Shown piece by piece: positions 1 through 47,241 of a stretch of DNA of 64,000 nucleotides. Each line of letters starts with the position of its first letter. The first letter of the stretch is position 1. The translations under genes were made by a program, and so were the position numbers. A model generated the notes under the pieces. That model was not told the origin of the DNA, did not search any database, and was given only the letters and a program-made list of their open reading frames with translations. The stretch is from Macrostomum lignano (taxonomy: Eukaryota): contig NIVC01002322.1 in assembly GCA_002269645.1 (NCBI GenBank), forward strand, positions 1 through 64,000, in the 5' to 3' direction.

Positions 1-74
1 GCCAACGCCACTCGCGTAAAAAAAGTTACAGAAGCACCCTGTGACCAGACCGTTTCTAATTATTATCTTCGCTT

Positions 75-1209: not shown

Positions 1210-1270
1210 CTATTCTAAATGTAGGCACACTGGCTCACAGCACTCGTCCCCTGTCCCTCCACTCGCGCAG

Positions 1271-9186: not shown

Positions 9187-10143
9187 ATGTCGGAAAACAC
9201 TCTCAAAGTTGGCGCCGACGAGAAGCCCGTTGACCAGCAGGCTGAAACTGAGAATCAAGACGAAGAATCCAACAAGAAGACTGAGGATCAAAACAAAGAT
9301 AACAAAGAAGCCGAGTCTAAGGATCAAGACAAAGACGACAAAGAAGCCAACGAGACCGAGGATCAAGACAAAGACGACAAAGAAGCCAACGAGACCGAGG
9401 ATCAAGACAAAGACGACAAAGAAGCCAACGAGACTGAGGATCAAAACAAAGACGACAAAGAAGCCAACGAGACTGAGGATCAAGACAAAGACGACAAAGA
9501 AACCAACAAGACTGAGGATCAAGACAAAGACGACAAAGGAGCCGAGATTGAGGATCAAGACGAGGAAGACAAAGAATCCGAGATTGAGGATCAAGACGAG
9601 GAAGACAAAGAATCCGAGACTGAGGATCAAGACAAAGAAGTCAACAAGAAGACTGAAGAGCTAGAGCAAGCAGCCAAGAAGACTGAGGATAAGGACCAGG
9701 CTGAAACTGGGAATACCAGAACTGTCATTCAGCCCGCTGACGATGATGAAGATTATGATGAAGACGAGGACGATGAAATTGTAGATAGTAATGAAGATGA
9801 TACTCCTCCAACTCCTCCTCATAAAAAGTACGAGTACATCCAACATACTAAAAATGATGATGGAACTGACCTGAAGTTGGAATCAAACGAAACGAGAATA
9901 CTGCGCACAGAGGAAGTAAAACAGAGTAAAAAAGAAGAGAAGAAACGAAAAAAGGAGGCCGAAAAGCAAGCTAAGTTAGAAAAGAAGCTAGCCAAGAAGA
10001 ATGAGAAGTTAAAGAAAAAGCAAGAGAAGATGGCTAAAAAGGAAGCGAAAAAGCTCGCGAAGAAGCAGGCGAAAGAGGAAAAAAAACGACGCGAAGACGA
10101 AATAAAGCGGGTGAAAGAGGAAAGGAAACAACGCGAAAAATAA
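9187..10143 (+). CDS. Highly charged repetitive protein: Asp/Glu-rich repeats (DQDKDDKEANETE) followed by a Lys/Glu coiled-coil tail
   Basis: Long ORF from ATG 9187 with codon-periodic repeats and unique non-repeat segments. aataaa follows at ~10169. No family recognised. Confidence 0.65.
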   Translation: MSENTLKVGADEKPVDQQAETENQDEESNKKTEDQNKDNKEAESKDQDKDDKEANETEDQDKDDKEANETEDQDKDDKEANETEDQNKDDKEANETEDQDKDDKETNKTEDQDKDDKGAEIEDQDEEDKESEIEDQDEEDKESETEDQDKEVNKKTEELEQAAKKTEDKDQAETGNTRTVIQPADDDEDYDEDEDDEIVDSNEDDTPPTPPHKKYEYIQHTKNDDGTDLKLESNETRILRTEEVKQSKKEEKKRKKEAEKQAKLEKKLAKKNEKLKKKQEKMAKKEAKKLAKKQAKEEKKRREDEIKRVKEERKQREK

Positions 10144-10482
10144 CAAAAGCAGGCAAAAGCTAAGTAGAATAAAAACAACCGATAAGCTGGAATCCCATCG
10201 ACACCGCACCAATAACTTTCTCAGTCATAAGGTTGCTTTGTCTTTTTGTTGTCGACTCATTGAGCATATGAAATTGATTTGAACAAATAAAAACGATTTG
10301 CGATAATTTCGTTTATTTTGAGTTAATTTAAATTGTAATTTTTTTCTTTATCAGATTACTGAAGGTTGAAACTATCTAACTACTCGGTTTAAAAAAATAA
10401 CATCGTAGCTTGAGCATCAGTGCATGACATACCCCGTACCGTAGCATCCAAAGAAGTTTGATAGCTAGTATCCGTATTAACA

Positions 10483-11492
10483 GCAACAACAACAACAACA
10501 ACAACAACAACAAAAACAACAACAACAACAACAAATTACGCAGCCCCGCAAGCAAAGTCGCAGAGCAGGGTGCGTCAGATGGCGCGCCGCAGAGCCTGAG
10601 AGCGGACGAAGTCCGCCCCGTTGGCAGTGTCGGGCGCCCCGGCGTCGCGTAGGAGGCAGTCCACGTATCGACGGGTTTGGGCCTGACCCCGCCTGAGCGG
10701 GCCCTGCAGGGTGAGCAGCAGGACGTCCTGAACAGGTTGGGGGCAGTAGCTCTGCCCGGATCATGCGGTGGCCCACCAGTTGACGTTGGCACCGGCGCAG
10801 GATGATGGACGGGCGCTGCAGCTTGGCCCGATCGTACAGGGCCTCTGTCCCGACGCTCTTGTCAGCTCGAAAGGCCGCACGGAGCAGTCCTGAGTGCGCC
10901 GAGTCCAGCTGCCGCTCCAGTGTAGCCGTCAGCGTCCACGTCTTAGCGTTGTAGAGCAGGACGGTTTCGACCACCGCCACCACAGCCGAGCCCTCTGGCG
11001 GTCGAGCAGCGTTTCGGACTGGACGACGGCCCGGAAGAAGGCCGCCCAGGCAAGTCCTCGGCGCCGCCGAAGGTTTTCCTCCACGTGAGGCACCAGACCG
11101 CCGAGGTAGATGAACCGCTGGCAGCGTGCTAGCTTGGTTGTCTGCCCGTCTGCGCCGCGGCACGTCAGGTCCGCTGGGATGTCGACCGGCACTGTCAGCA
11201 CCTCAGTCTTCAGAGTGTTGACAACCAGACCAACGCTCGATGCCACCTCGACCAGCTAGGCGCCTTCAACAAGGACAGGAGGGCGAGGTCGTCGGCGTAG
11301 CCAAACACGCTCAGGCGCTTTTCGCCGTGGCGGCGACCGATGCGTCTGCGCAGCAGGAAGCCATCGCCAGCCGAGGGGAGTGCGGTCTGAAGCACCCAGT
11401 CCAGCAGCAGCACGAAGAGCAACGGCGCCAGCGTGTCGCCCTGCAGAACTCCTGATGAAGTGTCGAACAGGTCAGACAGGCGTCACCACAGC
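10483..11492 (-). mobile_element. 5'-truncated, frameshifted RTE-like non-LTR retrotransposon fragment with (TTG)n 3' tail
   Basis: RT motifs SGVLQGDTLAPLLF, VFGYADDLALL and FIYLGG, C-terminal VDCLLRDAGAP..ALRRAI*, then (caa)n on the plus strand. Confidence 0.88.
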
Positions 11493-11512
11493 AATCCCAG
11501 AGCTACATGTAT

Positions 11513-11670
11513 CCAGAGTTCATCCAGACAACTGGACCTTTCTTTCTCCGGCAGGTCCGGTTCCAACTAGATTCCAATCCCAGAGCTATCCAGAGTTCAT
11601 CCAGACAACTGGACCTTTCTTTCTCCGGCAGGTCCGGTTCCAACTAGATTCCAATCCCAGAGCTATCCAG
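11513..11670. repeat. 77-bp direct tandem duplication abutting the RTE fragment 5' end
   Basis: The unit starting ccagagttcatccagac occurs at 11513 and 11590. It is mirrored at ~28785-28942. Confidence 0.9.
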
Positions 11671-12636
11671 TCTTCTCGAATGAATGCGAATCTTTCAACT
11701 TTACATGGCAACTGTCAGATTGCACAGGCTATAACCATTGTTGGTTGGCTGTTGACTTTGAAACAGGTGAAATCCGCACTTTTGTCTTTCTTTCGAAATA
11801 GAAAATAGTAGAAAAAGTTGCAATTGAAAGCAGAATATTTACACAGGACACCATTCACTGTTGGACAATCACATGGCTGAATTTTGAGACAGTCAGGTTT
11901 GTGCGAGGTTTCAGTGTAAAAAAAGTTACAAGCCAGCACAAATGACTTTTGGGAAGAACCTCGTAATTACCAGGATAGATACAATTATAATGAACATCCT
12001 TGAGGAACTTCACTGACCAACCCGAACTCCGAACAAAATTACCAACCGTAACGTCAGGACGGTGCAAGGCAGCGACGATACGTAGGAACTATCAGGGAAC
12101 GAAAGACGGTCCGCTTTTCCCTTTGTAGGACCAGAGAGAATAATGGTAAAAAACGAAAAAATTCAAGGAAAATATCAATAGCTACTTGGAAGAGGAAGTC
12201 AAAGAGAAAAATTCTGTTGCTAAAAAGTATCAGTAAGTAGTATATGCAGCAAGCGCGTCTCGATTTGTTCAAGAGTGAAGTTGTTGAAGAAGGTTCAGTT
12301 GAAAGCTACTGGAACAAAAAGGCACCTTAAATTAAAATACGAATTACTAGCTAATTACTGAATTCTCCATTCTCCCAACTTACGATTCAGGATTCAGATC
12401 CAATACGACTCGTATACTAAAAATTAAAGACTATAGATTCAATTTTCTAAACAAAAATAAGCTTCATCATAGTCTATTTCGTGGACATAGACTATAAATT
12501 TAATTTCACTCCTCCCAGTTCGGAACAGGTCTTTCAAAAGAGCTTGAATAGCCAATTTAAAGTCCTAGCGCGCTTAACTCGCTTAAGAGCAAATAAATCA
12601 AGCAAATTTAAACAGCTGAAGCCTTTAATTGCCAGC

Positions 12637-13053
12637 ATGCGGTCGCGTTCACAGTCACCTGCCGCCTCATCGAGCCAGTCGGAGAAGATGACAACGGATG
12701 CTCCAGCTCAGCTCCAGCGGGCCCGTCCAGCCAAGAGGAAACGCTCCGCTTCCAGGAGCACCGGCAAGAAACGCTCTGCTTCCAGGACCACCGGCAGGAA
12801 ACGCTCCGCCTCCAGGAGCACCGGCAGGAAACGCTCTGCTTCTAGGGGCACCGGCAGGAAACGCTCTGCTTCCAGGAGCACCGGCGGCAGGAAACGCTCT
12901 GCTTCCAGGGGAACCGGCAGGAAACGCTCCGCTTCTAGGAGCACCGGCAGGAAACGCTCTGCTTCCAAGGCCACTGGCAGGAAGCGCAGCCGAACAGCCA
13001 AGAAGTCATCAGCCAAACGCATGAAGATGGCCGAGAAGAAGCCGACGAAGTGA
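12637..13053 (+). CDS. Protamine-like / sperm nuclear basic protein candidate, copy 1
   Basis: 138 aa, intronless, R/K/S-rich, with 8 decapeptides (R/K)KRSAS(R/K)xTG. TATA-like ctataaat at ~12492. Confidence 0.7.
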   Translation: MRSRSQSPAASSSQSEKMTTDAPAQLQRARPAKRKRSASRSTGKKRSASRTTGRKRSASRSTGRKRSASRGTGRKRSASRSTGGRKRSASRGTGRKRSASRSTGRKRSASKATGRKRSRTAKKSSAKRMKMAEKKPTK

Positions 13054-13819
13054 AATTGGCGAGAGTTAGGCCTCGCTGATTGGCAGTCCACTACCTAAAC
13101 GATACAAGGACTCGGCTCCCATTATTTGCTATTTTTAGTTCAATCATTACCTCAGGAACATTAAAAAATCCACAGTGATTCAATGATACCGGGTATACTG
13201 TGCTTCTTAAACATTTTAGGGATTAAATTGGCCAGACTCTAGGCGAAATAAATAATTTTCCACTTTCTGTTCATGTAGGCAGCAGCTAACAGTCTCGAAT
13301 AAACAGAGAAAGACCAGATATGATTTTAAAAGCTAATGCTCTTAGACGCTTTTTCTTTTTCTTTACTCAAAAAAAGTGATAAAAAACAGCTGCTTATGAG
13401 CTAATGTATGAAAGTATGCAGACCCGAAAGAGGCAATTATGAATTATAACTGAGCTTGAAGTTTCTTCGAGACGAACGTAAAAAGCCCGTGAATAAGCCT
13501 CGGAAAAAGTGCACCATATACAGTATACTCGTATTGTATACGAGTACTTTGCTTCAGATGAAATTACAGTTACTTGTAGTTAAAAACCCTTTTACAGGAG
13601 CGTCGCCTTGGATTATGGTAGGGGGGGGGGCGGACACAGCCAAGAATTCTACATGTACGAGTACATGACTTAATCCCTACATGTATTTTGAGAATAGATG
13701 TTGTTAGCACTTAGTTTGTCGCCCTAAAGCAACGCTATTGATTTCAACAATTGGTTACAAGGTATAGGGTGAGGGGACAAAGCATTGGGATCCCAATACA
13801 CTGCCTATTGATGGGGGTT

Positions 13820-14125
13820 TCATAAACTCGAAGTTTCACAACGTCAAAAGCAACTTCCTTCAAAAGGTCAAAAACTCAATTTGCAGCCGCTATCACAAGA
13901 TCGAATTCAAGAGGTCGAAGTTTCACAACATCGAAAACTTTAGCAAAGGGCTTCATAAGGCTGAAATTGCACGTGGAAAACTATTTTTTCCGCATTGTGA
14001 ATCTTAAGTGGCTGCTATTCAAGTTTTTGGCGTCAAATTTCGACCTTATGAAGTCTCTTGCTAGAGTTTTCGACGTTGTGAAATAACTTGCTTTTCGACA
14101 TGAAATTTCGACCTTGTGAAGGCAC
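13820..14125. mobile_element. Foldback/MITE-like modular inverted repeat (tttcacaac..cgaaaa / ttttcg..gttgtgaaa family)
   Basis: Internal inverted modules. The same motifs occur at ~26330-26640 and 57896-58232. Confidence 0.55.
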
Positions 14126-15694
14126 CCCTATTGATCACATATTGACAACATTGATGTCCTATATATTGATTATCGATAGCTAATCTACAGATCTCGAATA
14201 TTGGGAAATTCTGAAAAGAACCATTTTTACGGTCTAAATACTAAAATCAATTGGGCGAGAAAAAAAAGAATTATTATCAAGATCATATTTTTCAGGGGAA
14301 GTCCTCATATGTATATAGCTAGTGCTTGCTTTAGCATGCTACTCGACAGCTAGAGGTTCGCACAAGGTGTTGCTAGTGCTATATATCGTCCTGAATTTGG
14401 CCTAAATCGCCATGAATTTAATTTAATATTTAACACAATAAACTATGAGATTTGTCAATGACTTGAAATAGGTCAAATGGTTCTTTAATCTAATTCTCTA
14501 GCAATCATTATAGTTTAGCAAATATTTATTAATCAAGGAATTTTTTAGCCAGTGCTCTTGCATTAATTAATTAAGTTAATTAGATTAATATGTCATTGAT
14601 ATATTTGTTATTATATAGTAGGCCTATTCAAATTTGCTCTGTTAAATGCTTGACTGAAATCAAATCAGTTTGAAATTTTCATTTTGTCCTCCTTTATAAA
14701 GTGCTATCTTTCTTTTTTACCTAAACCACAGAGGACAAATTGCTCAATAGATTGTCAACTAAACTGGCCTGATCATTCCCAGCTTCTGCAACTTGTCTAG
14801 CTTGGAATTGACAATAGACTCAAGAGTTTTAAGTGAAAGATAGATACAATATAGCAAAACTTTAAAGTAGATAAGCTCACATCTTGGCCTTGATACCCTT
14901 AATCATAGGTTGTCTCTACTAGTAGACTAGCTATGGCACTGGCTGAGGTCACATTGAAGAGCTTGTCAAGTTCTAATAGGTTTTTATTTAGAAGTCCAAA
15001 TAACTTTAATGCATATACAACAGTCATATCTATATGATATAATTAACTATGAAACCTAATAATGATGGAGAGCATATCTTGCATCTTTAGCCAATGGCCA
15101 TTATAGGCATAACTTAAGCAAGGTTGCAATGGTAACTTAAGTTTTGGGCACAAGTTGAGTAAGTCCCAAATTAGGTTAGCTTATCAAGATAATGCTAAAA
15201 GATATACCAAATTGCTATATTTATCAAATAATGCTATCAAATGGTAATCAAATGATAATTTTTAAAGATAGGCCTATGCTATAAGAAATTGGATATATTA
15301 ATAAATGGTGTTTGTAAGAAACATTTCAATCTCTTAGCTTATAAAAAAAACTAGAATCAATGTAGGTTTTCTACATTTTCTAAATAGGTCTAGCCATAAA
15401 ATATAATTGTATGCTAGTCAAGACTCTTAATACTTTTAAAAAGAATTGGTAGTATATACAAATTGCAATTTGGGTATTATTTTTCTAAAACCAAAATGTT
15501 AGGTTAAGGTATTGGGATCATTTAGCAATACTTATATTCCATAAATCTAATCTGCTGTTAATTGACTTTGGTATTAAGTTATAAAGATATAATAAATCCA
15601 TTTGTTTTAACTATTCTTTATTTTAATTATTATTTTTTTTTGCATTTTTAAATTTCAAGAAATAAATTATAAAAATTTTAGACTGGTTGATAAA

Positions 15695-16860
15695 ATGAAG
15701 TTAACATTGGAGTTTGGAGGTGGAGCAGAATTTCTTGTTGGCAATGTTAAAAAGCATGCAATTGATCTGCCAGATACACAGCAATGTAAATAGTTGGCCA
15801 GTTTAGTGATATTGACTCTTGTTACTATACATGTATCTTAATATAATGTCAACTAGCTGATGACCATGCTTCCATTTTATAGGGACCCTTGGCCAGTTGC
15901 TAGAATGGATCAAAGCTAATAAGCTGCAAGAGAGACCAGAGCTCTTCCTGCAAGGATCTTCTGTGTAAGCTGTTTTCAAACTTGTGTAGTTTTATTTCCT
16001 TGCTTCTGGCACATCTAAACCAGCTCTCTCTGTGTCTTCTATTACTGATTTCAGTCGGCCGGGCATTCTTGTACTAGTGAATGACACTGATTGGGAATTG
16101 CTGGTAAGCTATACTGAGCAATGGGGGGAGGGGTAAAGCAGTTCAGCAATAAATGCGTCCGCAGCTCTCATGCCACAACCAGTTCCATGCGTGGCAATGT
16201 TAATTTGTGACATGTGTATGGGGTTGTCTTGCAGTTCACACCCATGTGCACAGAATACCACAATGCTCATTCAGGCACCCTGAAGAAAAATCTCAATGCG
16301 AATTCATTTTGTGCTACTCTTCTCGTAAAGCTGTGGTAAAGTAGTAGGGAGAAGAATCACCATAGACGATATCACACTCGCATGGGCTTGTGATTTTTGC
16401 TTTGTGTTTTTAAGAAAGAGCCACATTCTTTTATTCTGCGACGAAAAGCAGTGCAGGTAGAAGTCTCAAGCCTATTCAGTGCCCATAAGGGCAAACCCTC
16501 AAGTCACAAAGAGTGTACACATGCATAACAGTTTGAAAAATTCGGTCCGTTGTACACCCCGTGTGAGCGCGTGCTGTGCCCTACTTACAGTATTTGCGCG
16601 TTTGTATGTGCTCAGGAGTGAGCGGAATGGGCAGAAATGCCTCGCTACTGGTTGTGGGATAATGTTGCCAAATGCTTTTTGCCAGGTTTCCCGCGGCCCT
16701 CCTGTGAATGAATTGTTTAATAATCTTAGCAACTAAAATATAGGTCTGCTAGCAACTCTGTGTCAAATGTCACTGTTTTCATCTATTTTAGGGCGAGCTC
16801 TCCTATCAGCTGAAGGACAATGACGATGTGGTATTCATATCAACTCTGCACGGCGGTTAA
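15695..16860 (+). CDS. URM1: Ubiquitin-related modifier 1
   Basis: Exons 15695-15785, 15883-15964, 16055-16103, 16792-16860 (all GT-AG) give MKLTLEFGGGAEFLV...[50 protein letters not shown]. Missed by the ORF track. Confidence 0.97.
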
Positions 16861-17589
16861 AATTATTGCCATCAATGACTTCGATTCAATTTGAAGTGAT
16901 AATTTCTGCAATTAAATGTAAATATTGATTCTCACTGTCTTCAACACAAAAAATTTACTGTCATTTGCTGTCCTTAAAATATTTTATATTGTTGTTGTAG
17001 CTGGAAAGACGAGTGTGATTAGTTAAAACAGGAGGTACCTCCATTCAATAGCATCAATGGACCATATGAATAAATCACAATGTGAGAAGCTGGTGTAACG
17101 CAAAATAGACACAGTCAGTGGCGTACGCAGGGGAGGGGGTAACGGAGGTTTGTGTACCGAGATTAGTGGTGCGGAGAAGCTGAGTAGCACTTTCCGCTAC
17201 TCCACCTTTTACTGGGCAGGCTATAAAACTGTCCTTTATTGTTGCAACTGGACACAATAGGTGTCTGCTTTTATCGGGTTCGTTTTGTTTACATTTTAAT
17301 TCCATTGAAACAATTCCCTATGGTGCCAGGTCCCATGGATATAGCAAATTTATATTCGCTAGCCACTGCGGTTAATATGAAAATCATAAAAATGTTTAAA
17401 TATAATGGCTTCAATCCTTCTTTAAAAACGATCTTGTTTTCTGTGCGTAAGCACAAGATTAACAAATTGGAGTAATCGTTCAGTTGCGAGATCTGCCTAC
17501 CATCTTTCTTTTCCCAGATCTATGGGATTGGGATAATGTAGTTGTAGCTCGGTGTGAAAGTATCCAAATGAATTTAGTTTACTTATAGG

Positions 17590-18045
17590 AACAATAACAA
17601 CAACAGAATACGCAGTTAGCGTCACAGGGCGCGCCTCAAGGCCAGGTCGCGAATGAACGCCACGCCGCCGGCCGAATCCGGGGCGCCGGCGTCAGCCAGC
17701 AGGCAGTCGACATCACAGCTTAGGTCGAGCGCTAGCTTTGCCAGTGCCCCTCTCCGCCAGGCGGCCTTGGGCGTGCGGCAGTTCAGCGTCCCGACCCGAA
17801 GCGTGCCATGCGGTACGGCTGGAACTTGATATAGATGAGCCTATTGGTCCCTGGCGCCACGCAGAAGATCCGTATGGGCCAGCACGGCAGCAGCTCGGTG
17901 GGAAGCACCACGTCGCCGACCGCGCCGATTTCGCTCACGCGGACGCTCGCTCCGCCGCCCTCGTTTGTTGGTCCTGCCGCTGTTGGCCGCCGCAGCAGTT
18001 AAGCGCGGCTCACCGCCCTGACCACTTGGAGGTAGCGACATTTAC
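17590..18045 (-). mobile_element. Internally deleted non-autonomous RTE-like element (endonuclease N-terminus fused to RT C-terminus)
   Basis: The minus strand reads TLRVGTLNCRT..LALDLSCD|VDCLLADAGAPDSAGGVAFIRDLALRRAL*, then a short (ttg) tail. Its 3' part is homologous to the 3' end of the 10483-11492 element. Confidence 0.8.
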
Positions 18046-18531
18046 TTGCACCAATGTGTAAATTTATTGGCACCTATAGGAAAAATCATCCTTTGCAGTA
18101 GCTAGCCTAAATTACGGTAAAAACCATTGTTATAAAGCTGTAATCTAAAGATTTTATGAATATTTTAGAATACATCAGCGCTAAACTCTCGAAATTAGGT
18201 ACCTATGCTTTTTCTTCATCCGGATTGTTAGCAAACAATCGAGCAGCTTTACTTAATTAACTTTATGAAAAGGCGAGTAAAGATATCGGTACATAAATAG
18301 CTTTTTCATCTGTCTTATCTTCTGACTAAAACATTTCGCAAGAATTTTTAAAGACAAGAAGAAACTTTGCGCCAAAAATTGAAGAAGTATTCATTCTTTA
18401 TTTGTCGCAGCGAAGGGCTCCTAACGCACAAGAATCCACGTATAATGTTCATATCATAGATTTGGTTCTATCAGAACCCATTCACTAACTAAAACGTCGC
18501 AATCTTGTGGTCTTTTAGAGTCGCATCACTT

Positions 18532-23300: not shown

Positions 23301-23999
23301 CCAAGTGACCTTAGGCTTTTGCTTGGTCGGCCCAATGCAAAAGCGGATAAAGCGGTGGTCCGAGAGTGAGTCCTCGTCCCACACTCGCCAGCCCGTGACT
23401 TCGGAAAGCAGTCCGGGTGAGGCGATGGTGGTGTCAATGACTTCGGCCCACCACCCATAATTGAACGTTGGTGCATTGCCCACGTTACAGAAATTGAGGT
23501 TTGTGCTGCTGACGTAGGCCAGCAGCTCCTCGCCTCTGTTATTGGTGTTCTTGCTGCCCCAATGCAGGTGGTGTGCGTTCACATCCCCTGCAATGAGCAG
23601 CTCGAACCGGCGGGACGCGGCGTAGTCAATGAGGTTGACTAGTGCGTCGCAGACTACTGGGGCATCGCCTGGGAAATAGGCGGATGCTACCAGCACAGGT
23701 TTATTTGGAATGAGGTTATTGATTTGAACAACACAGATGTCCCCAGTCGAGAGATCAGGTCTCATCCATGCCTCAAAAGCTTTTGCAGCAAAGACCAGAG
23801 ATCTTGGGCGAGGCTGAGAGCCCGCCATGCAAAAACAGTGGTAGCCAGATGGCACATTATTTGGCTTACCTTAAGTCATCCAGGGCTCCTGCACGAAGAC
23901 CAGGCCCGGAAGCTGTTGCTCTGTCGTGCGCATCAGGTTGACTGACGCCGCCACGCAGTGCTGGGTGTTGATCTGCAGACACCAGGTAGCCACTGGCAT
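20312..23999 (-). pseudogene. LINE ORF2 (AP endonuclease, reverse transcriptase, RNase H, C-terminal CCHC) with one premature stop and ~3 frameshifts
   Basis: APE: LQINTQHC..S, VQEPW, GDVNAHH..WGS, SLSDH. RT: IPKPGK..RPISLTS, FLDIEGAFDN, GGPQGGVL, YADD. RNase H: YTDGS, QSEVLAI, SDSQ, WIPGHAG..GNERAD. Knuckle: CPFC..ENAEHFICHC. Confidence 0.92.
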
Positions 24000-25649
24000 C
24001 AGTGCAGATCGGGTGTTGCAGTCGCCAGGAGTTCCTCCTCCTCCTCGGCGCTCACCAGCTTCGGGTCGGGGTCGCCGGTGTCCATGGGCTCTTCTTCAGC
24101 AAAAGGCCCCCGACTGGTCGGAAGGCAATAGGCAGCGTTCACCGCCCTTCGCCCACCGGCCACGGGGTCCTCCGCTTCCGACTGGCCCAATGCCCTGGAG
24201 CAGCCAGCCGCCTGGGCAGGCGGGTCCGTCTCCAGTCGGCCCTGCCCCGAGGGGTTGGGCCCAGCTGGGACGTCCCCACCCTCCCTGGACGAGCTGGTGC
24301 GCCTAGGCGTCCCGGCGACCTCTCTCCTCAGCTGGGTGATTTTAGCGGTGCGGACCGCCTCAGCTGCGCGCTGATACAGGCCGCGCCGCTTGGTGCTGCG
24401 CGCCGGGCGTCGGTCTCCTCCGCCCTCAGCAGCGCGCTCGGCTTTGCCCGCGCGGCCGTGCTGCCGGGCGGGGCTGTTTGCTTTGGCAGCCTGAGCAGAA
24501 GCTCGCGCTTCGACCCCGGCTGCTTCGGCATTCCGCCCGCCCTGCTCACTGCCACGGGTGAGGGTCGGCCTCGTAGAAGCGGATGCGCAACTTCCAAAGG
24601 CCGACGTTGATGAAGCTGCCGTGTGGATAGCGCCTCATCCAGGCGTCCGACAGCCCCAGGATGGCTGTGAAGCCAGTGCCGTCGGTGCGCTCAAGGGTGT
24701 CATGCACCACTAGGCCCGCGGTGGGAAGCTCTCGGTTGACTGCTAGCAGTCCTTTCCGGAGCTCGTCGGCAGAGGTAACGACGCTCCTGGCCGGAACCCA
24801 GATTCAATGCCTCTTGGTCCGGGGGCGTTCGTCCTCTCTGCAGAAGGCTCAATTGAGGTCCCAGCTCTGCTCGGGCAGCAGCTCAAGGAGCCGCCGACCC
24901 GAGTCAGCATCACTAGGCCAAATGAGAAGGCACGAGTCCCTCGTCGCATTCGAATGAATGTGCAGAGGCGTGCCCTTCAGAGTTTGCTTCCACAGGAGGC
25001 CATCAACGGCACCTCTCACCTGCTTCAGCTGGTCGGGAGACAGGCGCGCGTCCTTCCCCAGGATGACAACCGCCGGTTGCCTCTTTGCTGCATCAGCGTA
25101 GGAGGCCCGGGGGTCGGTGGAGCATTCTTCAGGTGGGCTGTCCACCCTCCCGTCTGCATCGGCCTCCCTATCCTGGGCAGGGACTTCAGTGGGCTCAAGG
25201 CCCTCTTCCACCACCGCCCCAGATTGGGAAGCTTCCGCTGCCGCGGGCCGTTGGCCCCTGGCGCCGGTTAGGCTTCCGCCCTCCTTGGCCCGCCTCGCCT
25301 TGTTAAGTCGACGGCGGGCAGCTCCAGAGGTGGTGCTCAGCTGCTTGGCAGCTGGAGTAGCAGGTGTCTTCTCGGAGGCACCGCTCAGAGTTGGCTCCAC
25401 GGGTCTCGCCGGGGCGTCCCCGATGGTAGCAGATGGTATGGCCGCGGAGTCCACGGCCCCAGCCGAGGCCGGAGGCACTGTGTCATCCACAGCCGGTTGG
25501 TCACTTCGGTTAGAAGCCATTGGCTGGAAAAGAAAAAGGTGGGACTTCCTGCAGAACACAGGCAAAGAGCCGCAAGGCCGCAACCCCAAACCAAGCGGCA
25601 GGCCCCCAAAAAGCAAAATACCACCTTGCGGGGGGACCCAAAAGCGCAA
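23999..25649 (-). pseudogene. LINE ORF1 (gag-equivalent; central region resembles DUF4780-type LOA ORF1) with in-frame stops
   Basis: ORF 25649-24849 continues in frame past stops as IWVPARS..ELRKGLLAVNRELPTAG..GLWKLRIRFY. The last segment ends at TGA 24001-23999, overlapping the ORF2 ATG (TGATG). Confidence 0.65.
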
Positions 25650-27401
25650 GGGGAACCGTTAGCGACCAGACTACTCCCTGGCCAAGCGTCCATCAGCACG
25701 GAGTTACACTGGGACATTAGAGGGTGCGTTTATATGGTCACACCAGGACCCGGCGCCAACGAATCAGCTCGGCAAGCCCCAAGAGCCTGCCTTAACACCC
25801 ACGGGACGAGTACCCTTCGAAGTGCGCCTTGCAAGGTGAAAATCAGGAGACAGAGTCTCTTGAGCTATCAGCCCGCCAGGGGAGGCAGGTGTGAGCATCG
25901 CTGGCTGGGATAAGGCCATACCAGTCTCATACTGCACAGATAGTTCACCACGCCATTGCGTGCAGGACCCGGGGTCACGTGGGTCATTTAAAATCAATCG
26001 TAGTCATCACAAGAAATGTGTGAAACGCGACTGCATGGCGAACCTTGTGCGTCTTCGTAAAAGGTCCGGACCACTGTCTGCTAGACGAGCTCTCTAGCTG
26101 TCGAGTAGCATGCTCAAGCAAGCACTAGCTATATACATATGAGGACTTCCCCTGAAAAATATGATCTTGATAATAATTCTTTTTTTCTCGCCCAATTGAT
26201 TTTAGACCGTAAAAATGGTTCCTTTCAGAATTTCCCCAATATTCGAGATCTGTAGATGAGCTATCGATAATACGAGCGTAACGTATACGAGTATAGGACA
26301 TTTTTGTTGTCAATATGTGATCAATAGGGGTGCCTTCACAAGGTCGAAATTTCACGTCGAAAAGCAAGTTATTTCACAACGTCGAAAACTCTAGCAAGAG
26401 ACTTCATAAGGTCGAAATTTGACATCAAAAACTTGAATAGCAGCCACTTAAAGATTCACAATGCGGAAAAAATAGTTTTCCACGTGCAATTTTAACCCTC
26501 TGAAGCCCTTTGCTAAAGTTTTCGATGTTGTGAAACTTCGACCTCTTGAATTCGATCTTGTGATAGCGGCTGCAAATTGAGTTTTTGACCTTTTGAAGGA
26601 AGTTGCTTTTGACGTTGTGAAACTTCGAGTTTATGAAACCCCCATCAATAGGCAGTGTATTGGGATCCCAATGCTTTGTCCCCTCACCCTACCTTGTAAC
26701 CAATTGTTGAAATCAATAGCGTTGCTTTAGGGCGACAAACTAAGTGCTAACAACATCTATTCTCAAAATACATGTAGGGATTAAGTCATGTACTCGTACA
26801 TGTAGAATTCTTGGCTGTGTCCGCCCCCCCCCCCTACCATAATCCAAGGCGACGCTCCTGTAAAAGGGTTTTTAACTACAAGTAACTGTAATTTCATCTG
26901 AAGCAAAGTACTCGTATACAATACGAGTATACTGTATATGGTGCACTTTTTCCGAGGCTTATTCACGGGCTTTTTACGTTCGTCTCGAAGAAACTTCAAG
27001 CTCAGTTATAATTCATAATTGCCTCTTTCGGGTCTGCATACTTTCATACATTAGCTCATAAGCAGCTGTTTTTTATCACTTTTTTTGAGTAAAGAAAAAG
27101 AAAAAGCGTCTAAGAGCATTAGCTTTTAAAATCATATCTGGTCTTTCTCTGTTTATTCGAGACTGTTAGCTGCTGCCTACATGAACAGAAAGTGGAAAAT
27201 TATTTATTTCGCCTAGAGTCTGGCCAATTTAATCCCTAAAATGTTTAAGAAGCACAGTATACCCGGTATCATTGAATCACTGTGGATTTTTTAATGTTCC
27301 TGAGGTAATGATTGAACTAAAAATAGCAAATAATGGGAGCCGAGTCCTTGTATCGTTTAGGTAGTGGACTGCCAATCAGCGAGGCCTAACTCTCGCCAAT
27401 T

Positions 27402-27818
27402 TCACTTCGTCGGCTTCTTCTCGGCCATCTTCATGCGTTTGGCTGATGACTTCTTGGCTGTTCGGCTGCGCTTCCTGCCAGTGGCCTTGGAAGCAGAGCG
27501 TTTCCTGCCGGTGCTCCTAGAAGCGGAGCGTTTCCTGCCGGTTCCCCTGGAAGCAGAGCGTTTCCTGCCGCCGGTGCTCCTGGAAGCAGAGCGTTTCCTG
27601 CCGGTGCCCCTAGAAGCAGAGCGTTTCCTGCCGGTGCTCCTGGAGGCGGAGCGTTTCCTGCCGGTGGTCCTGGAAGCAGAGCGTTTCTTGCCGGTGCTCC
27701 TGGAAGCGGAGCGTTTCCTCTTGGCTGGACGGGCCCGCTGGAGCTGAGCTGGAGCATCCGTTGTCATCTTCTCCGACTGGCTCGATGAGGCGGCAGGTGA
27801 CTGTGAACGCGACCGCAT
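27402..27818 (-). CDS. Protamine-like / sperm nuclear basic protein candidate, copy 2
   Basis: Translation identical to 12637-13053. Confidence 0.7.
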   Translation of the reverse strand: MRSRSQSPAASSSQSEKMTTDAPAQLQRARPAKRKRSASRSTGKKRSASRTTGRKRSASRSTGRKRSASRGTGRKRSASRSTGGRKRSASRGTGRKRSASRSTGRKRSASKATGRKRSRTAKKSSAKRMKMAEKKPTK

Positions 27819-28962
27819 GCTGGCAATTAAAGGCTTCAGCTGTTTAAATTTGCTTGATTTATTTGCTCTTAAGCGAGTTAAGCGCGCTAGGACTTTAAAT
27901 TGGCTATTCAAGCTCTTTTGAAAGACCTGTTCCGAACTGGGAGGAGTGAAATTAAATTTATAGTCTATGTCCACGAAATAGACTATGATGAAGCTTATTT
28001 TTGTTTAGAAAATTGAATCTATAGTCTTTAATTTTTAGTATACGAGTCGTATTGGATCTGAATCCTGAATCGTAAGTTGGGAGAATGGAGAATTCAGTAA
28101 TTAGCTAGTAATTCGTATTTTAATTTAAGGTGCCTTTTTGTTCCAGTAGCTTTCAACTGAACCTTCTTCAACAACTTCACTCTTGAACAAATCGAGACGC
28201 GCTTGCTGCATATACTACTTACTGATACTTTTTAGCAACAGAATTTTTCTCTTTGACTTCCTCTTCCAAGTAGCTATTGATATTTTCCTTGAATTTTTTC
28301 GTTTTTTACCATTATTCTCTCTGGTCCTACAAAGGGAAAAGCGGACCGTCTTTCGTTCCCTGATAGTTCCTACGTATCGTCGCTGCCTTGCACCGTCCTG
28401 ACGTTACGGTTGGTAATTTTGTTCGGAGTTCGGGTTGGTCAGTGAAGTTCCTCAAGGATGTTCATTATAATTGTATCTATCCTGGTAATTACGAGGTTCT
28501 TCCCAAAAGTCATTTGTGCTGGCTTGTAACTTTTTTTACACTGAAACCTCGCACAAACCTGACTGTCTCAAAATTCAGCCATGTGATTGTCCAACAGTGA
28601 ATGGTGTCCTGTGTAAATATTCTGCTTTCAATTGCAACTTTTTCTACTATTTTCTATTTCGAAAGAAAGACAAAAGTGCGGATTTCACCTGTTTCAAAGT
28701 CAACAGCCAACCAACAATGGTTATAGCCTGTGCAATCTGACAGTTGCCATGTAAAGTTGAAAGATTCGCATTCATTCGAGAAGACTGGATAGCTCTGGGA
28801 TTGGAATCTAGTTGGAACCGGACCTGCCGGAGAAAGAAAGGTCCAGTTGTCTGGATGAACTCTGGATAGCTCTGGGATTGGAATCTAGTTGGAACCGGAC
28901 CTGCCGGAGAAAGAAAGGTCCAGTTGTCTGGATGAACTCTGGATACATGTAGCTCTGGGATT

Positions 28963-29970
28963 GCTGTGGTGACGCCTGTCTGACCTGTTCGACACTTCAT
29001 CAGGAGTTCTGCAGGGCGACACGCTGGCGCCGTTGCTCTTCGTGCTGCTGCTGGACTGGGTGCTTCAGACCGCACTCCCCTCGGCTGGCGATGGCTTCCT
29101 GCTGCGCAGACGCATCGGTCGCCGCCACGGCGAAAAGCGCCTGAGCGTGTTTGGCTACGCCGACGACCTCGCCCTCCTGTCCTTGTTGAAGGCGCCTAGC
29201 TGGTCGAGGTGGCATCGAGCGTTGGTCTGGTTGTCAACACTCTGAAGACTGAGGTGCTGACAGTGCCGGTCGACATCCCAGCGGACCTGACGTGCCGCGG
29301 CGCAGACGGGCAGACAACCAAGCTAGCACGCTGCCAGCGGTTCATCTACCTCGGCGGTCTGGTGCCTCACGTGGAGGAAAACCTTCGGCGGCGCCGAGGA
29401 CTTGCCTGGGCGGCCTTCTTCCGGGCCGTCGTCCAGTCCGAAACGCTGCTCGACCGCCAGAGGGCTCGGCTGTGGTGGCGGTGGTCGAAACCGTCCTGCT
29501 CTACAACGCTAAGACGTGGACGCTGACGGCTACACTGGAGCGGCAGCTGGACTCGGCGCACTCAGGACTGCTCCGTGCGGCCTTTCGAGCTGACAAGAGC
29601 GTCGGGACAGAGGCCCTGTACGATCGGGCCAAGCTGCAGCGCCCGTCCATCATCCTGCGCCGGTGCCAACGTCAACTGGTGGGCCACCGCATGATCCGGG
29701 CAGAGCTACTGCCCCCAACCTGTTCAGGACGTCCTGCTGCTCACCCTGCAGGGCCCGCTCAGGCGGGGTCAGGCCCAAACCCGTCGATACGTGGACTGCC
29801 TCCTACGCGACGCCGGGGCGCCCGACACTGCCAACGGGGCGGACTTCGTCCGCTCTCAGGCTCTGCGGCGCGCCATCTGACGCACCCTGCTCTGCGACTT
29901 TGCTTGCGGGGCTGCGTAATTTGTTGTTGTTGTTGTTGTTTTTGTTGTTGTTGTTGTTGTTGTTGTTGCT
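28963..29970 (+). mobile_element. RTE-like fragment, duplicated copy in right arm
   Basis: GVLQGDTLAP and YADD motifs and (ttg)n tail. Mirror of 10483-11492. Confidence 0.88.
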
Positions 29971-30309
29971 GTTAATACGGATACTAGCTATCAAACTTCT
30001 TTGGATGCTACGGTACGGGGTATGTCATGCACTGATGCTCAAGCTACGATGTTATTTTTTTTAAACCGAGTAGTTAGATAGTTTCAACCTTCAGTAATCT
30101 GATAAAGAAAAAAATTACAATTTAAATTAACTCAAAATAAACGAAATTATCGCAAATCGTTTTTATTTGTTCAAATCAATTTCATATGCTCAATGAGTCG
30201 ACAACAAAAAGACAAAGCAACCTTATGACTGAGAAAGTTATTGGTGCGGTGTCGATGGGATTCCAGCTTATCGGTTGTTTTTATTCTACTTAGCTTTTGC
30301 CTGCTTTTG

Positions 30310-31464
30310 TTATTTTTCGCGTTGTTTCCTTTCCTCTTTCACCCGCTTTATTTCGTTTTCGCGTCGTTTTTTTTCCTCTTTCGCCTGCTTCTTCGCGAGC
30401 TTTTTCGCTTCCTTTTTAGCCATCTTCTCTTGCTTTTTCTTTAACTTCTCATTCTTCTTGGCTAGCTTCTTTTCTAACTTAGCTTGCTTTTCGGCCTCCT
30501 TTTTTCGTTTCTTCTCTTCTTTTCTACTCTGTTTTACTTCCTCTGTGCGCAGTATTCTCGTTTCGTTTGATTCCAGCTTCAGGTCAGTTCCATCATCATT
30601 TTTAGTATGTTGGATGTACTCGTACTTTTTATGAGGAGGAGTTGGAGGAGTATCATCTTCATTACTATCTACAATTTCATCTTCTTCTTCTTCTTCTCCG
30701 TTTATCGCCTTGCGGCGTGGAGTGAACAGCGTCAGGCTTCACCGGAAGTGCGTTTGTGTCGCGCCATGTTTGTCGCCGATAACGTTCTTCCGCACCTGTC
30801 GCATTCTGCTGTCTTCCCTCGGTATTTTCTTGCTCAATTCTCTTGTTCTCCTCCATCTCCGGTGGACTGTGGTGTTGTTCAATTTCATCTTCTTCTTCTT
30901 CATCATCTTCGTCATCATCGTCAGCGGGCTGAATGATAGTTCTGGTATTCTCAGTTTCAGCCTGGTCCTTATCCTCAGTCTTCTTGGCTGCTTGCTCTAG
31001 CTCTTCAGTCTTCTTGTTGACTTCTTTGTCTTGATCCTCAGTCTCGGATTCTTTGTCTTCCTCGTCTTGATCCTCAATCTCGGATTCTTTGTCTTCCTCG
31101 TCTTGATCCTCAATCTCGGATTTTTTGTCTTTCTCGTCTTGATCCTCAGTCTCGTTGGCTTATTTGTCGTCTTTGTCTTGATCCTCAGTCTTGTTGGTTT
31201 CTTTGTCGTCTTTGTCTTGATCCTCAGTCTCGTTGGCTTCTTTGTCGTCTTTGTCTTGATCCTCGGTCTCGTTGGCTTCTTTGTCGTCTTTGTCTTGATC
31301 CTCGGTCTCGTTGGCTTCTTTGTCGTCTTTGTCTTGATCCTCGGTCTCGTTGGCTTCTTTGTCGTCTTTGTCTTGATCCTCGGTCTCGTTGGCTTCTTTG
31401 TCGTCTTTGTCTTGATCCTTAGACTCGGCTTCTTTGTCATCTTTGTCTTGGTCCTCAGTCTTCT
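30310..31464 (-). pseudogene. 5'-truncated copy of the acidic/Lys-rich gene carrying a frame-disrupting ~210-bp insert
   Basis: Homology to the left copy starts at 31464 with no ATG in frame. The insert is flanked by duplicated caatttcatcttcttcttcttc and leads to TGA. Confidence 0.65.
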
Positions 31465-47084: not shown

Positions 47085-47132
<48 letters not shown>

Positions 47133-47190
47133 GGACAGACAGACGGACAGACAAAAAGACAGACAAACAGACACTAAGACAGACAGACAC

Positions 47191-47241
<51 letters not shown>

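What the first reader, a model, noticed from the sequence alone, without database searches (positions are those of the whole stretch)
9275..31464. 22-kb palindrome-like amplicon: ~5-kb near-identical inverted arms, each with a protamine-like gene, around a spacer with a secreted polyprotein gene
Seen in sequence: 9275-14355 and 26092-31464 are reverse complements. Each arm contains the acidic/Lys-rich gene, the same RTE fragment, the same 77-bp duplication and an identical protamine-like ORF. Removing the TSD-flanked LINE shrinks the spacer to ~5.9 kb, about one arm length. Established: mammalian Y-chromosome palindromes keep testis genes in near-identical inverted arms by gene conversion. Inference: this may be a miniature analogue, a male-reproduction amplicon (sperm chromatin protein plus a candidate seminal/glandular peptide precursor) in an invertebrate.
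Basis: partly seen in the sequence, partly recalled or inferred. Interest (0 to 1): 0.78.

Follow-up and report, generated by a model that had tools for sequence, protein, structure and literature searches.

The report
Inverted gene duplication flanking a small inversion
A real 22-kb "mini-palindrome" in the flatworm Macrostomum lignano is best read as a small chromosomal inversion that duplicated one breakpoint in inverted orientation and has since been partly homogenised by gene conversion; a role in male reproduction is untested.

Summary
Arms 9275-14355 and 26092-31464 are reverse complements, 98.9% identical overall. A 3.86-kb core has no substitutions; the edges are 2-5% diverged.

The window is bases 1-64000 of Macrostomum lignano contig NIVC01002322.1. 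A paralogous contig (NIVC01000150.1) carries the same genes but only one arm. There the spacer lies in the opposite orientation and the LINE site is empty. So the window reads A-L-S-L'-B where the paralogue reads A-L-S'-B. This is the signature of an inversion with an inverted duplication at one breakpoint, or of an inverted duplication followed by a spacer flip.

- The duplication cut the acidic gene. The right copy has no start codon, a premature stop and a frameshifting 208-bp insert, so it is a pseudogene.
- The basic "protamine-like" gene is complete and identical in both arms. It evolves as a coding gene (dN/dS 0.25) but has no real homologues.

Testis or gland expression could not be tested. 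This is a known kind of structure: interest is moderate to low.

The parts
9275..14355 (+). Left arm (L), 5081 bp. Its outer junction with flank A (9274|9275) is the ancestral type; its inner junction with the spacer (14355|14356) is novel.
   Evidence: In the paralogous contig, homology to L runs on past 9275 to 8659 but stops exactly at 14355.
26092..31464 (-). Right arm (R), 5373 bp, the reverse complement of L. Its inner junction with the spacer (26091|26092) is the ancestral type; its outer junction with flank B (31464|31465) is novel and shows GAATCC microhomology.
   Evidence: In the paralogous contig, homology to R runs through 26092 into 25973 and stops at 31464.
10097..13955 (+). Identical core of the arms (R counterpart 26501-30356). 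There are 0 substitutions. The only differences are 4 length differences in homopolymer, microsatellite or dinucleotide runs. Read as a gene-conversion tract.
   Evidence: The same stretch is about 9% diverged from the paralogous contig.
9187..10143 (+). Acidic/Lys-rich gene, intact copy: a 318-aa ORF with 39-bp tandem repeats and a K/E-rich tail. Its first 88 nt lie outside the arm.
   Evidence: NCBI calls a gene at exactly this range, with a 305-aa product. It is intact in the paralogue, with dN/dS 0.41.
30310..31464 (-). Truncated acidic-gene copy, a pseudogene. It has no ATG, an in-frame TGA just upstream of the homology, a premature TAA at 31162-31160 and a 208-bp frameshifting insert.
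   Evidence: NCBI calls only a 91-aa partial product at 31160-31435.
30694..30901 (-). A 208-bp insertion found only in R, bounded by direct repeats of about 20 bp (gaagaagaagatgaaattg). It is absent from L and from the paralogue.
10479..11500 (-). R counterpart is about 28955-29973.
   Evidence: Pfam gave no hit. The paralogue also has it, about 1 kb longer.
11510..11670 (+). 77-bp tandem duplication, 2.1 copies, 100% identical. R counterpart 28785-28945.
12637..13053 (+). Basic Ser/Arg/Lys-rich gene, copy 1: 138 aa, pI 12, 8 repeats of about RKRSASRSTG, single exon. A TATA-like motif sits near 12490 and AATAAA motifs near 13250 and 13300.
   Evidence: NCBI calls a 193-aa partial product at 12472-13053. 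dN/dS against the paralogue is 0.25 in this frame and 1.2 and 2.4 in the other two.
27402..27818 (-). Basic gene, copy 2. The CDS is identical to copy 1, and so is the surrounding 1.1 kb.
14356..26091 (.). Spacer, 11,736 bp (about 5.95 kb without the LINE). It is inverted relative to the paralogous contig.
15695..16860 (+). Urm1 (ubiquitin-related modifier 1) gene. Four exons: 15695-15785, 15883-15964, 16055-16103, 16792-16860.
   Evidence: The spliced 96-aa product matches a UniRef M. lignano Urm1 entry exactly. Pfam family Urm1 is recorded for the called gene.
18532..19588 (-). Secreted repeat-protein gene. Exon 1 (19541-19588) encodes the signal-peptide-like MKLIVLLLVTIAVAAA. Exon 2 (18532-19449) encodes about 15 Pro/Arg/acidic units separated by Lys-Arg. 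TATA near 19675, AATAAA near 18400.
   Evidence: NCBI calls a gene at 18532-19412. In the paralogue, exon 1 and the TATA box are conserved. dN/dS is 0.30 in this frame and 1.5 and 1.8 in the other two.
20196..25972 (-). LINE insertion, 5777 bp, with APE, RT and RNase H domains and frameshifted ORFs. 12-bp target-site duplications at 20184-20195 and 25973-25984.
   Evidence: The paralogue has an empty site.

Best explanation
This is a real inverted segmental duplication in the Macrostomum lignano genome, and it bounds a small inversion.

**Ancestral order.** The paralogous contig keeps the order A - L - S' - B. A is the flank containing the 5' end of the acidic gene. L holds the acidic gene, a retrotransposon fragment and the basic gene. 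S' holds the secreted-repeat gene and Urm1. B holds ADK and AKR.

**The event.** In the window's lineage the block next to L was inverted and L was copied in inverted orientation to the far breakpoint, giving A - L - S - L' - B.
- The most economical route is a single inversion with staggered breaks about 5 kb apart at one breakpoint, followed by fill-in and end-joining. The R|B junction lies in GAATCC microhomology.
- A two-step route gives the same product: an inverted duplication, then a spacer flip by recombination between the arms.

**Consequences.**
1. The basic-protein gene became two complete, identical copies.
2. The acidic gene was cut about 88 nt into its coding sequence. The promoter-less right copy has since decayed.
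3. Urm1 and the secreted-repeat gene changed orientation.
4. A LINE later inserted into the spacer.

**Later homogenisation.** Arm-to-arm gene conversion erased all substitutions in the central 3.86 kb. The edges, which carry indels, kept 2-5% divergence.

**Shown:** the structure, the single-arm paralogue with the inverted spacer, the empty LINE site, the divergence pattern and the coding constraint. **Inferred:** the polarity of the change, the break mechanism, gene conversion as the process, and any function.
For: - **The arms are real and their edges are exact**.
- **Identity of the sequence.** Window coordinates equal record coordinates of NIVC01002322.1, Mlig_3_7 assembly.
- **The paralogous contig NIVC01000150.1** carries BCKDK, TRAM/LAG1, ZFAND1, AKR, ADK, Urm1, the secreted-repeat gene and the acidic gene. 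It has only one arm.
- **How its homology maps onto the window**:
  - B (31637-31495) comes first.
  - About 870 unrelated bp follow.
  - S then runs forward, 15250-20196, and joins directly to 25973-26091.
  - The arm follows, 26092-31464, equivalent to L 14355-9275.
  - Flank A closes the series, 9274-8659.
- **Junctions.** R and the paralogue run together past the inner boundary. L and the paralogue run together past the outer boundary.
- **Which arm is more derived.** The paralogue lacks R's 208-bp insert. It agrees with L at 32 of 50 L/R differences and with R at 14.
- **Divergence**. L-R is 2.2% at the outer edge, 0 of 3854 sites in the core and 4.6% at the inner edge. L-paralogue is 4.4%, 9.2% and 11.5% for the same segments. 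At the edge ratio, roughly 140-175 core differences would be expected; none is seen.
- **The genes are constrained.** dN/dS is 0.25, 0.41 and 0.30, and above 1 in the alternative frames of the basic and secreted genes.
- **The genes are transcribed.** Calls exist at these coordinates, and this assembly's annotation is transcript-derived (PMC5730564).
- **The mechanism has precedent.** Staggered-break inversions with inverted duplications are described in Drosophila (PMC1885836).
Against: - **No outgroup.** Polarity rests on parsimony, because the older BCKDK paralogues are not syntenic.
- **One breakpoint is not pinned down.** The roughly 0.9 kb next to the ancestral S'|B junction (window 14356-15250) is unrelated to the corresponding 870 bp in the paralogue. 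The spacer-side breakpoint is not resolved to the base.
- **The stagger would be long.** 5.1 kb is several times the longest duplication in the Drosophila set (about 1.9 kb).
- **No reads could be examined.** Mlig_3_7 is described as error-prone for this neopolyploid genome (PMC10733133), and the structure lies 9 kb from a contig end.
- **Possible polishing artefact.** A perfectly identical core could in principle be exaggerated by consensus polishing.
Confidence: 0.7

Rival explanations
1. The palindrome is ancestral. The two-arm structure existed before the two paralogous regions separated. The paralogous contig later lost one arm, and the spacer flipped in one lineage by recombination between the arms.
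For: - The roughly 870 bp between B and S in the paralogue is unrelated to the window. It could be the scar of a deletion.
- Gene conversion is active here, so low L-R divergence does not by itself date the duplication.
- No outgroup is available.
Against: - It needs three events (formation, arm loss, flip) where the main explanation needs one or two.
- No remnant of a second arm is found in the paralogue.
- Even the edges, which are not homogenised, are only about 40-50% as diverged as L versus the paralogue.
- R carries the truncated, decaying gene copy and more derived changes (32 against 14), as expected of a younger, secondary copy.
Confidence: 0.13
2. Assembly artefact. The right arm and the spacer orientation come from a chimeric join, for example of reads from another subgenome copy or a fold-back read, in the Canu/PacBio assembly.
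For: - Mlig_3_7 comes from a neopolyploid genome with three subgenomes, and its analysts describe it as error-prone.
- The structure lies 9-31 kb from the start of the contig.
- Reads could not be inspected.
Against: - Fold-back artefacts give spacer-less, uniformly near-identical arms. Here an 11.7-kb unique spacer separates the arms.
- The arms differ by a 208-bp insert, a 78-bp repeat-number change and about 50 substitutions clustered at the edges, while the core is identical.
- Two unrelated false joins would have to mimic an inversion exactly, and no sequence is shared at the joins beyond 6 bp.
- There are no Ns or scaffold gaps.
- R has changes found neither in L nor in the paralogue, so it is a separately evolving copy.
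Confidence: 0.07
3. One reading: a selected male-reproduction cassette, a miniature of sex-chromosome palindromes. Gene conversion is maintained because it protects a sperm-chromatin (protamine-like) gene, and the spacer gene encodes a seminal or glandular peptide precursor.
For: - The basic gene is the one intact duplicated gene and lies wholly inside the converted core.
- Its product is small, has pI 12 and 36% R+K, and is rich in phosphorylatable Ser. It is a constrained orphan.
- The spacer gene has a signal-peptide-like exon and Lys-Arg-separated repeats.
- This reading is compatible with the structural explanation above.
Against: - No expression or localisation data were reachable.
- The protein has no poly-Arg tracts, no Cys and no H1 domain. 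The only Pfam hit is a sub-threshold compositional match to HC2. The HMMER hits are unrelated 10-residue-period repeat proteins.
- There are only two copies.
- The other arm gene is a pseudogene.
- The spacer holds the housekeeping gene Urm1.
- The repeat peptides lack the Gly-Lys-Arg amidation signature.
- Conversion tracts need no selective explanation.
Confidence: 0.12

Closest known systems
Inversions with inverted duplications at their breakpoints (staggered-break model; Drosophila melanogaster group, Ranz et al. 2007, PMC1885836)
   Same: - Sequence that is single-copy in the ancestral order and lies next to one breakpoint now sits at both ends of the inverted segment, in inverted orientation.
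- Only one of the two breakpoints is duplicated, a case the paper also describes.
- The duplicated gene fragment decays.
- The new junction has only microhomology.
   Different: - The duplication is 5.1 kb, against at most about 1.9 kb in that set.
- The inverted segment is only about 6 kb, so this is a micro-inversion.
- The copies are partly homogenised by gene conversion instead of diverging to about 88% identity.
- The comparison here is between paralogous subgenome copies of one neopolyploid genome, not between species.
Sex-chromosome palindromes of primates and mouse (ampliconic testis genes, arm-to-arm gene conversion; from established knowledge, not tested here)
   Same: - Inverted arms lie around a unique spacer.
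- There is evidence of arm-to-arm conversion.
- There is potential for spacer inversion.
- An intact gene is kept as an identical pair.
   Different: - The arms are 5 kb, not 9 kb to 1.45 Mb.
- Identity is non-uniform, with edges 2-5% diverged.
- There are two copies only.
- The animal is a hermaphrodite, so no sex-chromosome context applies.
- Testis expression is unknown.
- One arm gene is a pseudogene.
Inverted-repeat-mediated recurrent inversions in human (NAHR flip-flop; e.g. PMC3961182, found, abstract only)
   Same: Inverted repeats of a few kb flank a segment whose orientation differs between copies.
   Different: Only one orientation is seen here, in one assembly. Polymorphism or recurrence was not tested.
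Sperm nuclear basic proteins (protamines and protamine-like proteins)
   Same: The protein is small, very basic (pI 12) and rich in Arg, Lys and Ser. It is a repetitive, lineage-restricted product of a single exon.
   Different: - Arg is 22%, with no Arg tracts.
- There is no H1 winged-helix domain and no Cys.
- No homologue was found.
- Expression is unknown.

Membership tests
Inversion with inverted breakpoint duplication (staggered-break type) | A segment is inverted relative to the ancestral or reference gene order. | tested here: met
   Urm1 and the secreted-repeat gene have the opposite orientation, relative to ADK/AKR and to the acidic gene, in the paralogous contig.
Inversion with inverted breakpoint duplication (staggered-break type) | Sequence that is single-copy in the uninverted arrangement and adjacent to one breakpoint is present at both ends of the inversion, in inverted orientation. 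| tested here: met
   The paralogue has one arm, adjacent to the spacer. The window has two. The junction pattern is that A|L and S|R are ancestral and L|S and R|B are novel.
Inversion with inverted breakpoint duplication (staggered-break type) | No pre-existing inverted repeat or transposon at both breakpoints that could have mediated the inversion by ectopic recombination. | tested here: inconclusive
   No arm-like sequence lies between B and S in the paralogue. However, about 0.9 kb at that junction cannot be aligned between the two contigs.
Inversion with inverted breakpoint duplication (staggered-break type) | Polarity (which arrangement is derived) is fixed by an outgroup. | not testable with these tools
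   The older BCKDK paralogues are not syntenic. No other Macrostomum genome could be searched.
Sex-chromosome-type ampliconic palindrome | Arm-to-arm identity is very high along the whole arm (above 99.9%) and is maintained by gene conversion. | tested here: not met
   The core is identical at 3854 of 3854 sites, but the edges are 2.2% and 4.6% diverged. The arms also differ by 208-bp and 78-bp indels, and overall identity is 98.9%. Conversion is inferred for the core only.
Sex-chromosome-type ampliconic palindrome | Arm genes are intact, multi-copy and expressed mainly in testis. | not testable with these tools
   One arm gene (basic) is intact in 2 copies. The other is a pseudogene in R. Tissue expression could not be reached. 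Transcript-based gene calls show only that the loci are transcribed.
Sex-chromosome-type ampliconic palindrome | It lies in a non-recombining, sex-limited chromosome region. | not tested
   M. lignano is a simultaneous hermaphrodite (PMC5977470 title). From general knowledge, not from these papers, hermaphrodites have no sex-limited chromosome. The chromosomal location of this contig was not determined.
Protamine / protamine-like sperm nuclear basic protein | Composition: protamines have at least about 30% Arg with Arg tracts; protamine-like proteins have about 35-50% Lys+Arg (criteria from memory). | tested here: inconclusive
   R is 21.7% and K 14.5% (sum 36%), S is 21.7%, pI is 12.0. No run of more than two Arg occurs. 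It falls at the low end of the protamine-like range and fails the protamine criterion.
Protamine / protamine-like sperm nuclear basic protein | Relationship to histone H1 (for the protamine-like type) or to a known protamine family. | tested here: not met
   Pfam gives only a sub-threshold HC2 match (18.7 bits against a cut-off of 40). The word-indexed search found no homologues. The 47 HMMER hits are unrelated periodic repeats.
Protamine / protamine-like sperm nuclear basic protein | Spermatid or sperm-nucleus-specific expression and replacement of histones. | not testable with these tools
   No expression resource was available. No paper text contains these peptide strings.
Prohormone / neuropeptide-type polyprotein | An N-terminal signal peptide followed by repeated peptides flanked by dibasic cleavage sites. 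| tested here: met
   MKLIVLLLVTIAVAAA is followed by about 15 units separated by Lys-Arg. The exon, the TATA box and the frame are conserved in the paralogue. The signal peptide was judged by inspection, not by a predictor.
Prohormone / neuropeptide-type polyprotein | Peptide maturation signatures (for example Gly before the dibasic site for amidation) and neural or glandular expression. | tested here: not met
   No Gly precedes any Lys-Arg. The units end in acidic runs (EEDDD-KR). Expression is not testable. A secreted disordered Pro-rich repeat protein is an equally good reading.

The most novel reading that the evidence does not exclude
The arms form a self-maintaining mini-palindrome in a hermaphrodite. 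Gene conversion keeps a duplicated, lineage-specific sperm-chromatin (protamine-like) gene as an identical pair. The spacer, which carries a secreted reproductive-gland peptide precursor, flips between orientations in living populations. This would be convergence with mammalian sex-chromosome palindromes outside any sex chromosome.
Probability: 0.1. Interest if true: 0.65.

Novelty: new member of a known kind. Interest (0 to 1): 0.35.

Why it matters
The locus is a clean, base-level example of how paralogous regions of a recently polyploid animal genome diverge in structure.

A 6-kb micro-inversion is coupled to a 5-kb inverted duplication. That single change doubled one orphan gene, killed a copy of its neighbour, and created inverted repeats that now undergo gene conversion. 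In principle the repeats can also re-invert the spacer.

For M. lignano workers it flags three things:
- A pair of identical basic-protein genes and a conserved secreted-repeat gene. Both are candidates for expression and RNAi tests.
- A locus where read mapping and RNAi or primer design will be confounded by the duplicated arms.
- A test case for assembly validation.

It does not open a new category of biology.

Tried and rejected
- **Homology searches for the arm genes.**
  - The word-indexed search with the basic protein returned nothing.
  - The same search with the acidic protein hit the 8000-candidate ceiling and returned nothing, so it is inconclusive.
  - The exhaustive HMMER scan with the basic protein returned only unrelated proteins with 10-residue repeats.
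  - None of these searches returned the window's own annotated 193-aa product, so absence there is weak evidence.
- **Exact look-ups of my gene models.** The acidic, basic and secreted models and the 91-aa guess all failed. The deposited products differ in length from the genomic ORFs (305 against 318 aa, 248 against 321 aa, a 193-aa partial).
- **Spliced protein look-up.** I got round this through cluster ids.
- **RNA genes.** Rfam and tRNA scans of the window found nothing.
- **Retrotransposon fragment.** Pfam gave nothing in either contig, so the RTE clade is unverified.
- **Outgroup.** The 73%-identical BCKDK paralogues are on non-syntenic contigs.
- **Ancestral S'|B junction.** Aligning it base by base failed, because about 0.9 kb is unrelated on each side.
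- **Literature.** No paper links M. lignano to a protamine gene, and no paper contains these peptide strings.
- **Rejected idea: the arm core is a mobile element.** No other copy exists in the window or in the fetched loci.
- **Rejected idea: the basic protein starts upstream of the ATG.** The upstream reading frame is not conserved in the paralogue.
- **Not pursued.** I did not search paper supplements for in situ primer sequences.

Full report

Yes. The repeat finder, BLAST and a global MAFFT alignment agree on two arms, 9275-14355 (5081 bp) and 26092-31464 (5373 bp). They are reverse complements around an 11,736-bp spacer. The main block is 98.9% identical over 4615 columns. Homology stops abruptly at all four edges. 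The window contains no Ns and no further copy of the arm.

Each arm carries the same features:
- a 39-bp tandem-repeat coding region;
- an (AAC)n tract followed by a decayed GC-rich retrotransposon fragment;
- a perfect 77-bp x2.1 duplication;
- a basic ORF.

The LINE in the spacer (20196-25972) has endonuclease, reverse-transcriptase and RNase H matches. It is flanked by a perfect 12-bp target-site duplication.

**2. Where the window comes from**

A large exon at 62510-63454 is 100% identical to the BCKDK protein of Macrostomum lignano. The contig look-up shows that window coordinates equal record coordinates 1-64000 of NIVC01002322.1 (184,136 bp, assembly Mlig_3_7, GCA_002269645.1).

That assembly was made with Canu from PacBio reads. 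Its gene calls derive from RNA-seq-guided transcripts, with ORFs called by TransDecoder (PMC5730564). The genome is neopolyploid with three subgenomes, and the authors who analysed the assembly call it error-prone (PMC10733133).

**3. Anatomy**

*Left arm.*
- The acidic/Lys-rich gene is a 318-aa ORF at 9187-10143. Its ATG and first 88 nt lie outside the arm.
- The basic gene is at 12637-13053. It encodes 138 aa with pI 12.0, 21.7% Arg, 14.5% Lys and 21.7% Ser, and eight units of about RKRSASRSTG. It is a single exon with TATA-like and AATAAA motifs.

*Right arm.*
- The basic gene and 1.1 kb around it are identical to the left copy.
- The acidic copy starts at the arm edge with no ATG and has an in-frame TGA just upstream.
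- It carries a premature TAA at 31162-31160.
- It also has a 208-bp insert (30694-30901) bounded by direct repeats of about 20 bp, which shifts the frame. It is a pseudogene.

*Spacer.* There are two genes besides the LINE and a second small retrotransposon fragment.
- Urm1 is a four-exon gene at 15695-16860 on the + strand. Its spliced 96-aa product is an exact match to a UniRef M. lignano Urm1 entry.
- A two-exon gene lies at 18532-19588 on the - strand. Exon 1 encodes MKLIVLLLVTIAVAAA. Exon 2 encodes about 15 Pro/Arg/Ser/Thr/acidic units separated by Lys-Arg.

NCBI gene calls exist at the acidic gene, the basic gene, Urm1, the secreted-repeat gene and the stump of the right acidic copy. These loci are therefore transcribed in whole animals.

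**4. The decisive comparison**

A second contig of the same assembly, NIVC01000150.1, carries a 99%-identical BCKDK and the same neighbouring genes. I reached the relevant part by rebuilding the spliced AKR and Urm1 proteins and using their cluster members.

Aligned to the window, that contig reads in this order:
1. flank B (31637-31495);
2. about 870 unrelated bp;
3. the spacer, forward from 15250 to 20196, running straight on into 25973-26091 (an empty LINE site, with an overlap equal to the target-site duplication);
4. one arm (26092-31464, equivalent to L 14355-9275);
5. flank A (9274-8659).

So the paralogue is A-L-S'-B, with a single arm and the spacer in the opposite orientation. The window is A-L-S-L'-B.

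At base level, R and the paralogue run together across the inner boundary, while L stops exactly at "ctagag". L and the paralogue run together across the outer boundary, while R stops there. Hence A|L and S|R are ancestral-type junctions, and L|S and R|B are new.

The R|B junction lies in GAATCC microhomology between flank B and the acidic gene. The paralogue lacks R's 208-bp insert.

**5. Divergence pattern**

| Segment | L versus R | L versus paralogue |
|---|---|---|
| Outer edge, 9641-10096 | 2.2% | 4.4% |
| Core, 10097-13955 | 0 of 3854 sites | 9.2% |
| Inner edge, 13956-14355 | 4.6% | 11.5% |

The core is not unusually conserved. At the edge ratio, roughly 140-175 L-R differences would be expected there, and none is seen. 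Arm-to-arm gene conversion of the central tract is the straightforward explanation. The indel-bearing edges escaped it.

Of the 50 L/R substitutions, the paralogue agrees with L at 32, with R at 14 and with neither at 4. This fits a secondary, less constrained right copy.

**6. Are the genes real?**

| Gene | dN/dS in the proposed frame | dN/dS in the other two frames |
|---|---|---|
| Basic gene | 0.25 (12 synonymous, 9 non-synonymous differences) | 1.2 and 2.4 |
| Secreted-repeat gene | 0.30 | 1.5 and 1.8 |
| Acidic gene | 0.41 | 0.59 and 0.97 |

These values compare the window with the paralogue. For the secreted-repeat gene, the signal-peptide exon is identical and the TATA box is conserved. 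All three are therefore constrained protein-coding genes. The constraint on the acidic gene is weak.

**7. Mechanism**

The pattern is sequence that is single-copy in the uninverted arrangement and lies beside one breakpoint, now at both ends of an inverted segment in inverted orientation. This is what the staggered-break model of inversion predicts. It is common at Drosophila inversion breakpoints, including cases where only one breakpoint is duplicated (PMC1885836). I take this one-step origin as most likely.

An inverted duplication followed by a spacer flip through recombination between the arms gives the same product. The two cannot be told apart here.

The weaknesses are these:
- There is no outgroup.
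- The stagger would be 5.1 kb, well beyond the 1.9 kb seen in flies.
- About 0.9 kb at the spacer-side breakpoint cannot be aligned.

*Rival: ancestral palindrome with arm loss in the paralogue.* It needs more events and leaves no remnant. I put it at about 0.13.

*Rival: assembly artefact.* I consider it unlikely, at about 0.07, for these reasons:
- The spacer is long and unique.
- The arms differ by structured changes concentrated at the edges.
- R has private changes.
- Two false joins would have to imitate an inversion.

Only reads can settle the artefact question.

**8. Function**

The arms do nothing by themselves. Their effect is two identical copies of the basic gene, a dead copy of the acidic gene, reoriented Urm1 and secreted-repeat genes, and a substrate for conversion and re-inversion.

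"Protamine-like" is a compositional label only:
- R+K is 36%.
- There are no Arg tracts, no Cys and no H1 domain.
- The only Pfam hit is a sub-threshold HC2 match.
- There are no true homologues.

The repeated RKRSAS motif resembles basophilic-kinase and SR-type phospho-sites (my inference from general knowledge). A nuclear, phosphorylated basic protein is plausible. I put a sperm-chromatin role at about one in four.

The spacer gene fits "signal peptide plus Lys-Arg-separated repeats" but lacks amidation signatures. A secreted disordered Pro-rich protein is an equally good reading. No tissue expression data were reachable, and no paper contains these sequences.

**9. Verdict**

- The functional half, a male-reproduction amplicon, is untested. 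Parts of it are weakened by the pseudogene, the presence of Urm1, the two-copy count and the hermaphrodite context.
- This is a new example of a known kind of rearrangement, documented unusually cleanly between paralogous regions of a neopolyploid flatworm.
- Interest: 0.35.

Noticed in passing
window 15695-16860 (+): A complete four-exon Urm1 (ubiquitin-related modifier 1) gene sits in the spacer. NCBI annotates only a 65-aa partial product here.
   Followed up: yes
window 1-2200: The window starts at base 1 of contig NIVC01002322.1. A Pellino-like gene (ORF 1294-2133) appears to be cut by the contig start. The palindrome therefore lies only 9 kb from a contig end.
   Followed up: partly
window 14356-15250; L005 8130-8995: The roughly 0.9 kb next to the novel L|S junction is unrelated to the roughly 870 bp at the same position in the paralogous contig. 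Neither stretch matches anything else that was fetched. It could be filler captured at the breakpoint or independent turnover.
   Followed up: partly
window 14359-14368 and 26038-26047: The 10-mer CGCACAAGGT occurs 4 nt beyond the L inner boundary and again about 45 nt beyond the R inner boundary, in the ancestral continuation. It is not conserved in the paralogue. It may be a templated insertion at the junction, or chance (rough p of about 0.003-0.01).
   Followed up: partly
window 31465-31478 versus 9257-9274: The novel R|B junction lies in short microhomology: GAATCC..CA is present both in flank B (the paralogue also has it, as GGAATTCTCA) and in the acidic gene just outside the left arm.
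   Followed up: partly
window 11493-11718; L005 17073-18108: Where the window arms have 225 bp containing the 77-bp duplication, the paralogue has about 1 kb more of the same retrotransposon fragment. The deletion plus duplication is shared by both arms.
   Followed up: partly
window 13800-14130 (and 26320-26650); related 58129-58217: A fold-back, MITE-like element with internal inverted repeats lies at the inner end of each arm. A 77%-similar piece occurs at about 58.1-58.2 kb.
   Followed up: no
window 9187-10143, 18532-19412: The NCBI products are shorter than the genomic ORFs (305 against 318 aa, 248 against 321 aa). The transcripts used for annotation therefore differ from the genome in repeat number. 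The cause could be repeat-length variation between paralogues or collapsed repeats.
   Followed up: no
window 2776-3387, 36282-37085, 44694-47680, 60451-61268: There are several other long tandem repeats that stay open in several frames. One lies within the range of the annotated ADK gene. Another is an annotated 337-aa gene with DEDYGADD-type repeats. The region is unusually rich in coding-like minisatellites.
   Followed up: no
contigs NIVC01000522.1 and NIVC01000594.1 (L007, L008): An older BCKDK paralogue (73% identical) is present as the exact same protein on two further contigs with different neighbours. It shows the layered duplication history of this genome.
   Followed up: partly
database searches: Neither the word-indexed search nor the exhaustive HMMER search returned the window's own annotated 193-aa basic protein. 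Negative results for these low-complexity proteins should not be read as absence.
   Followed up: no
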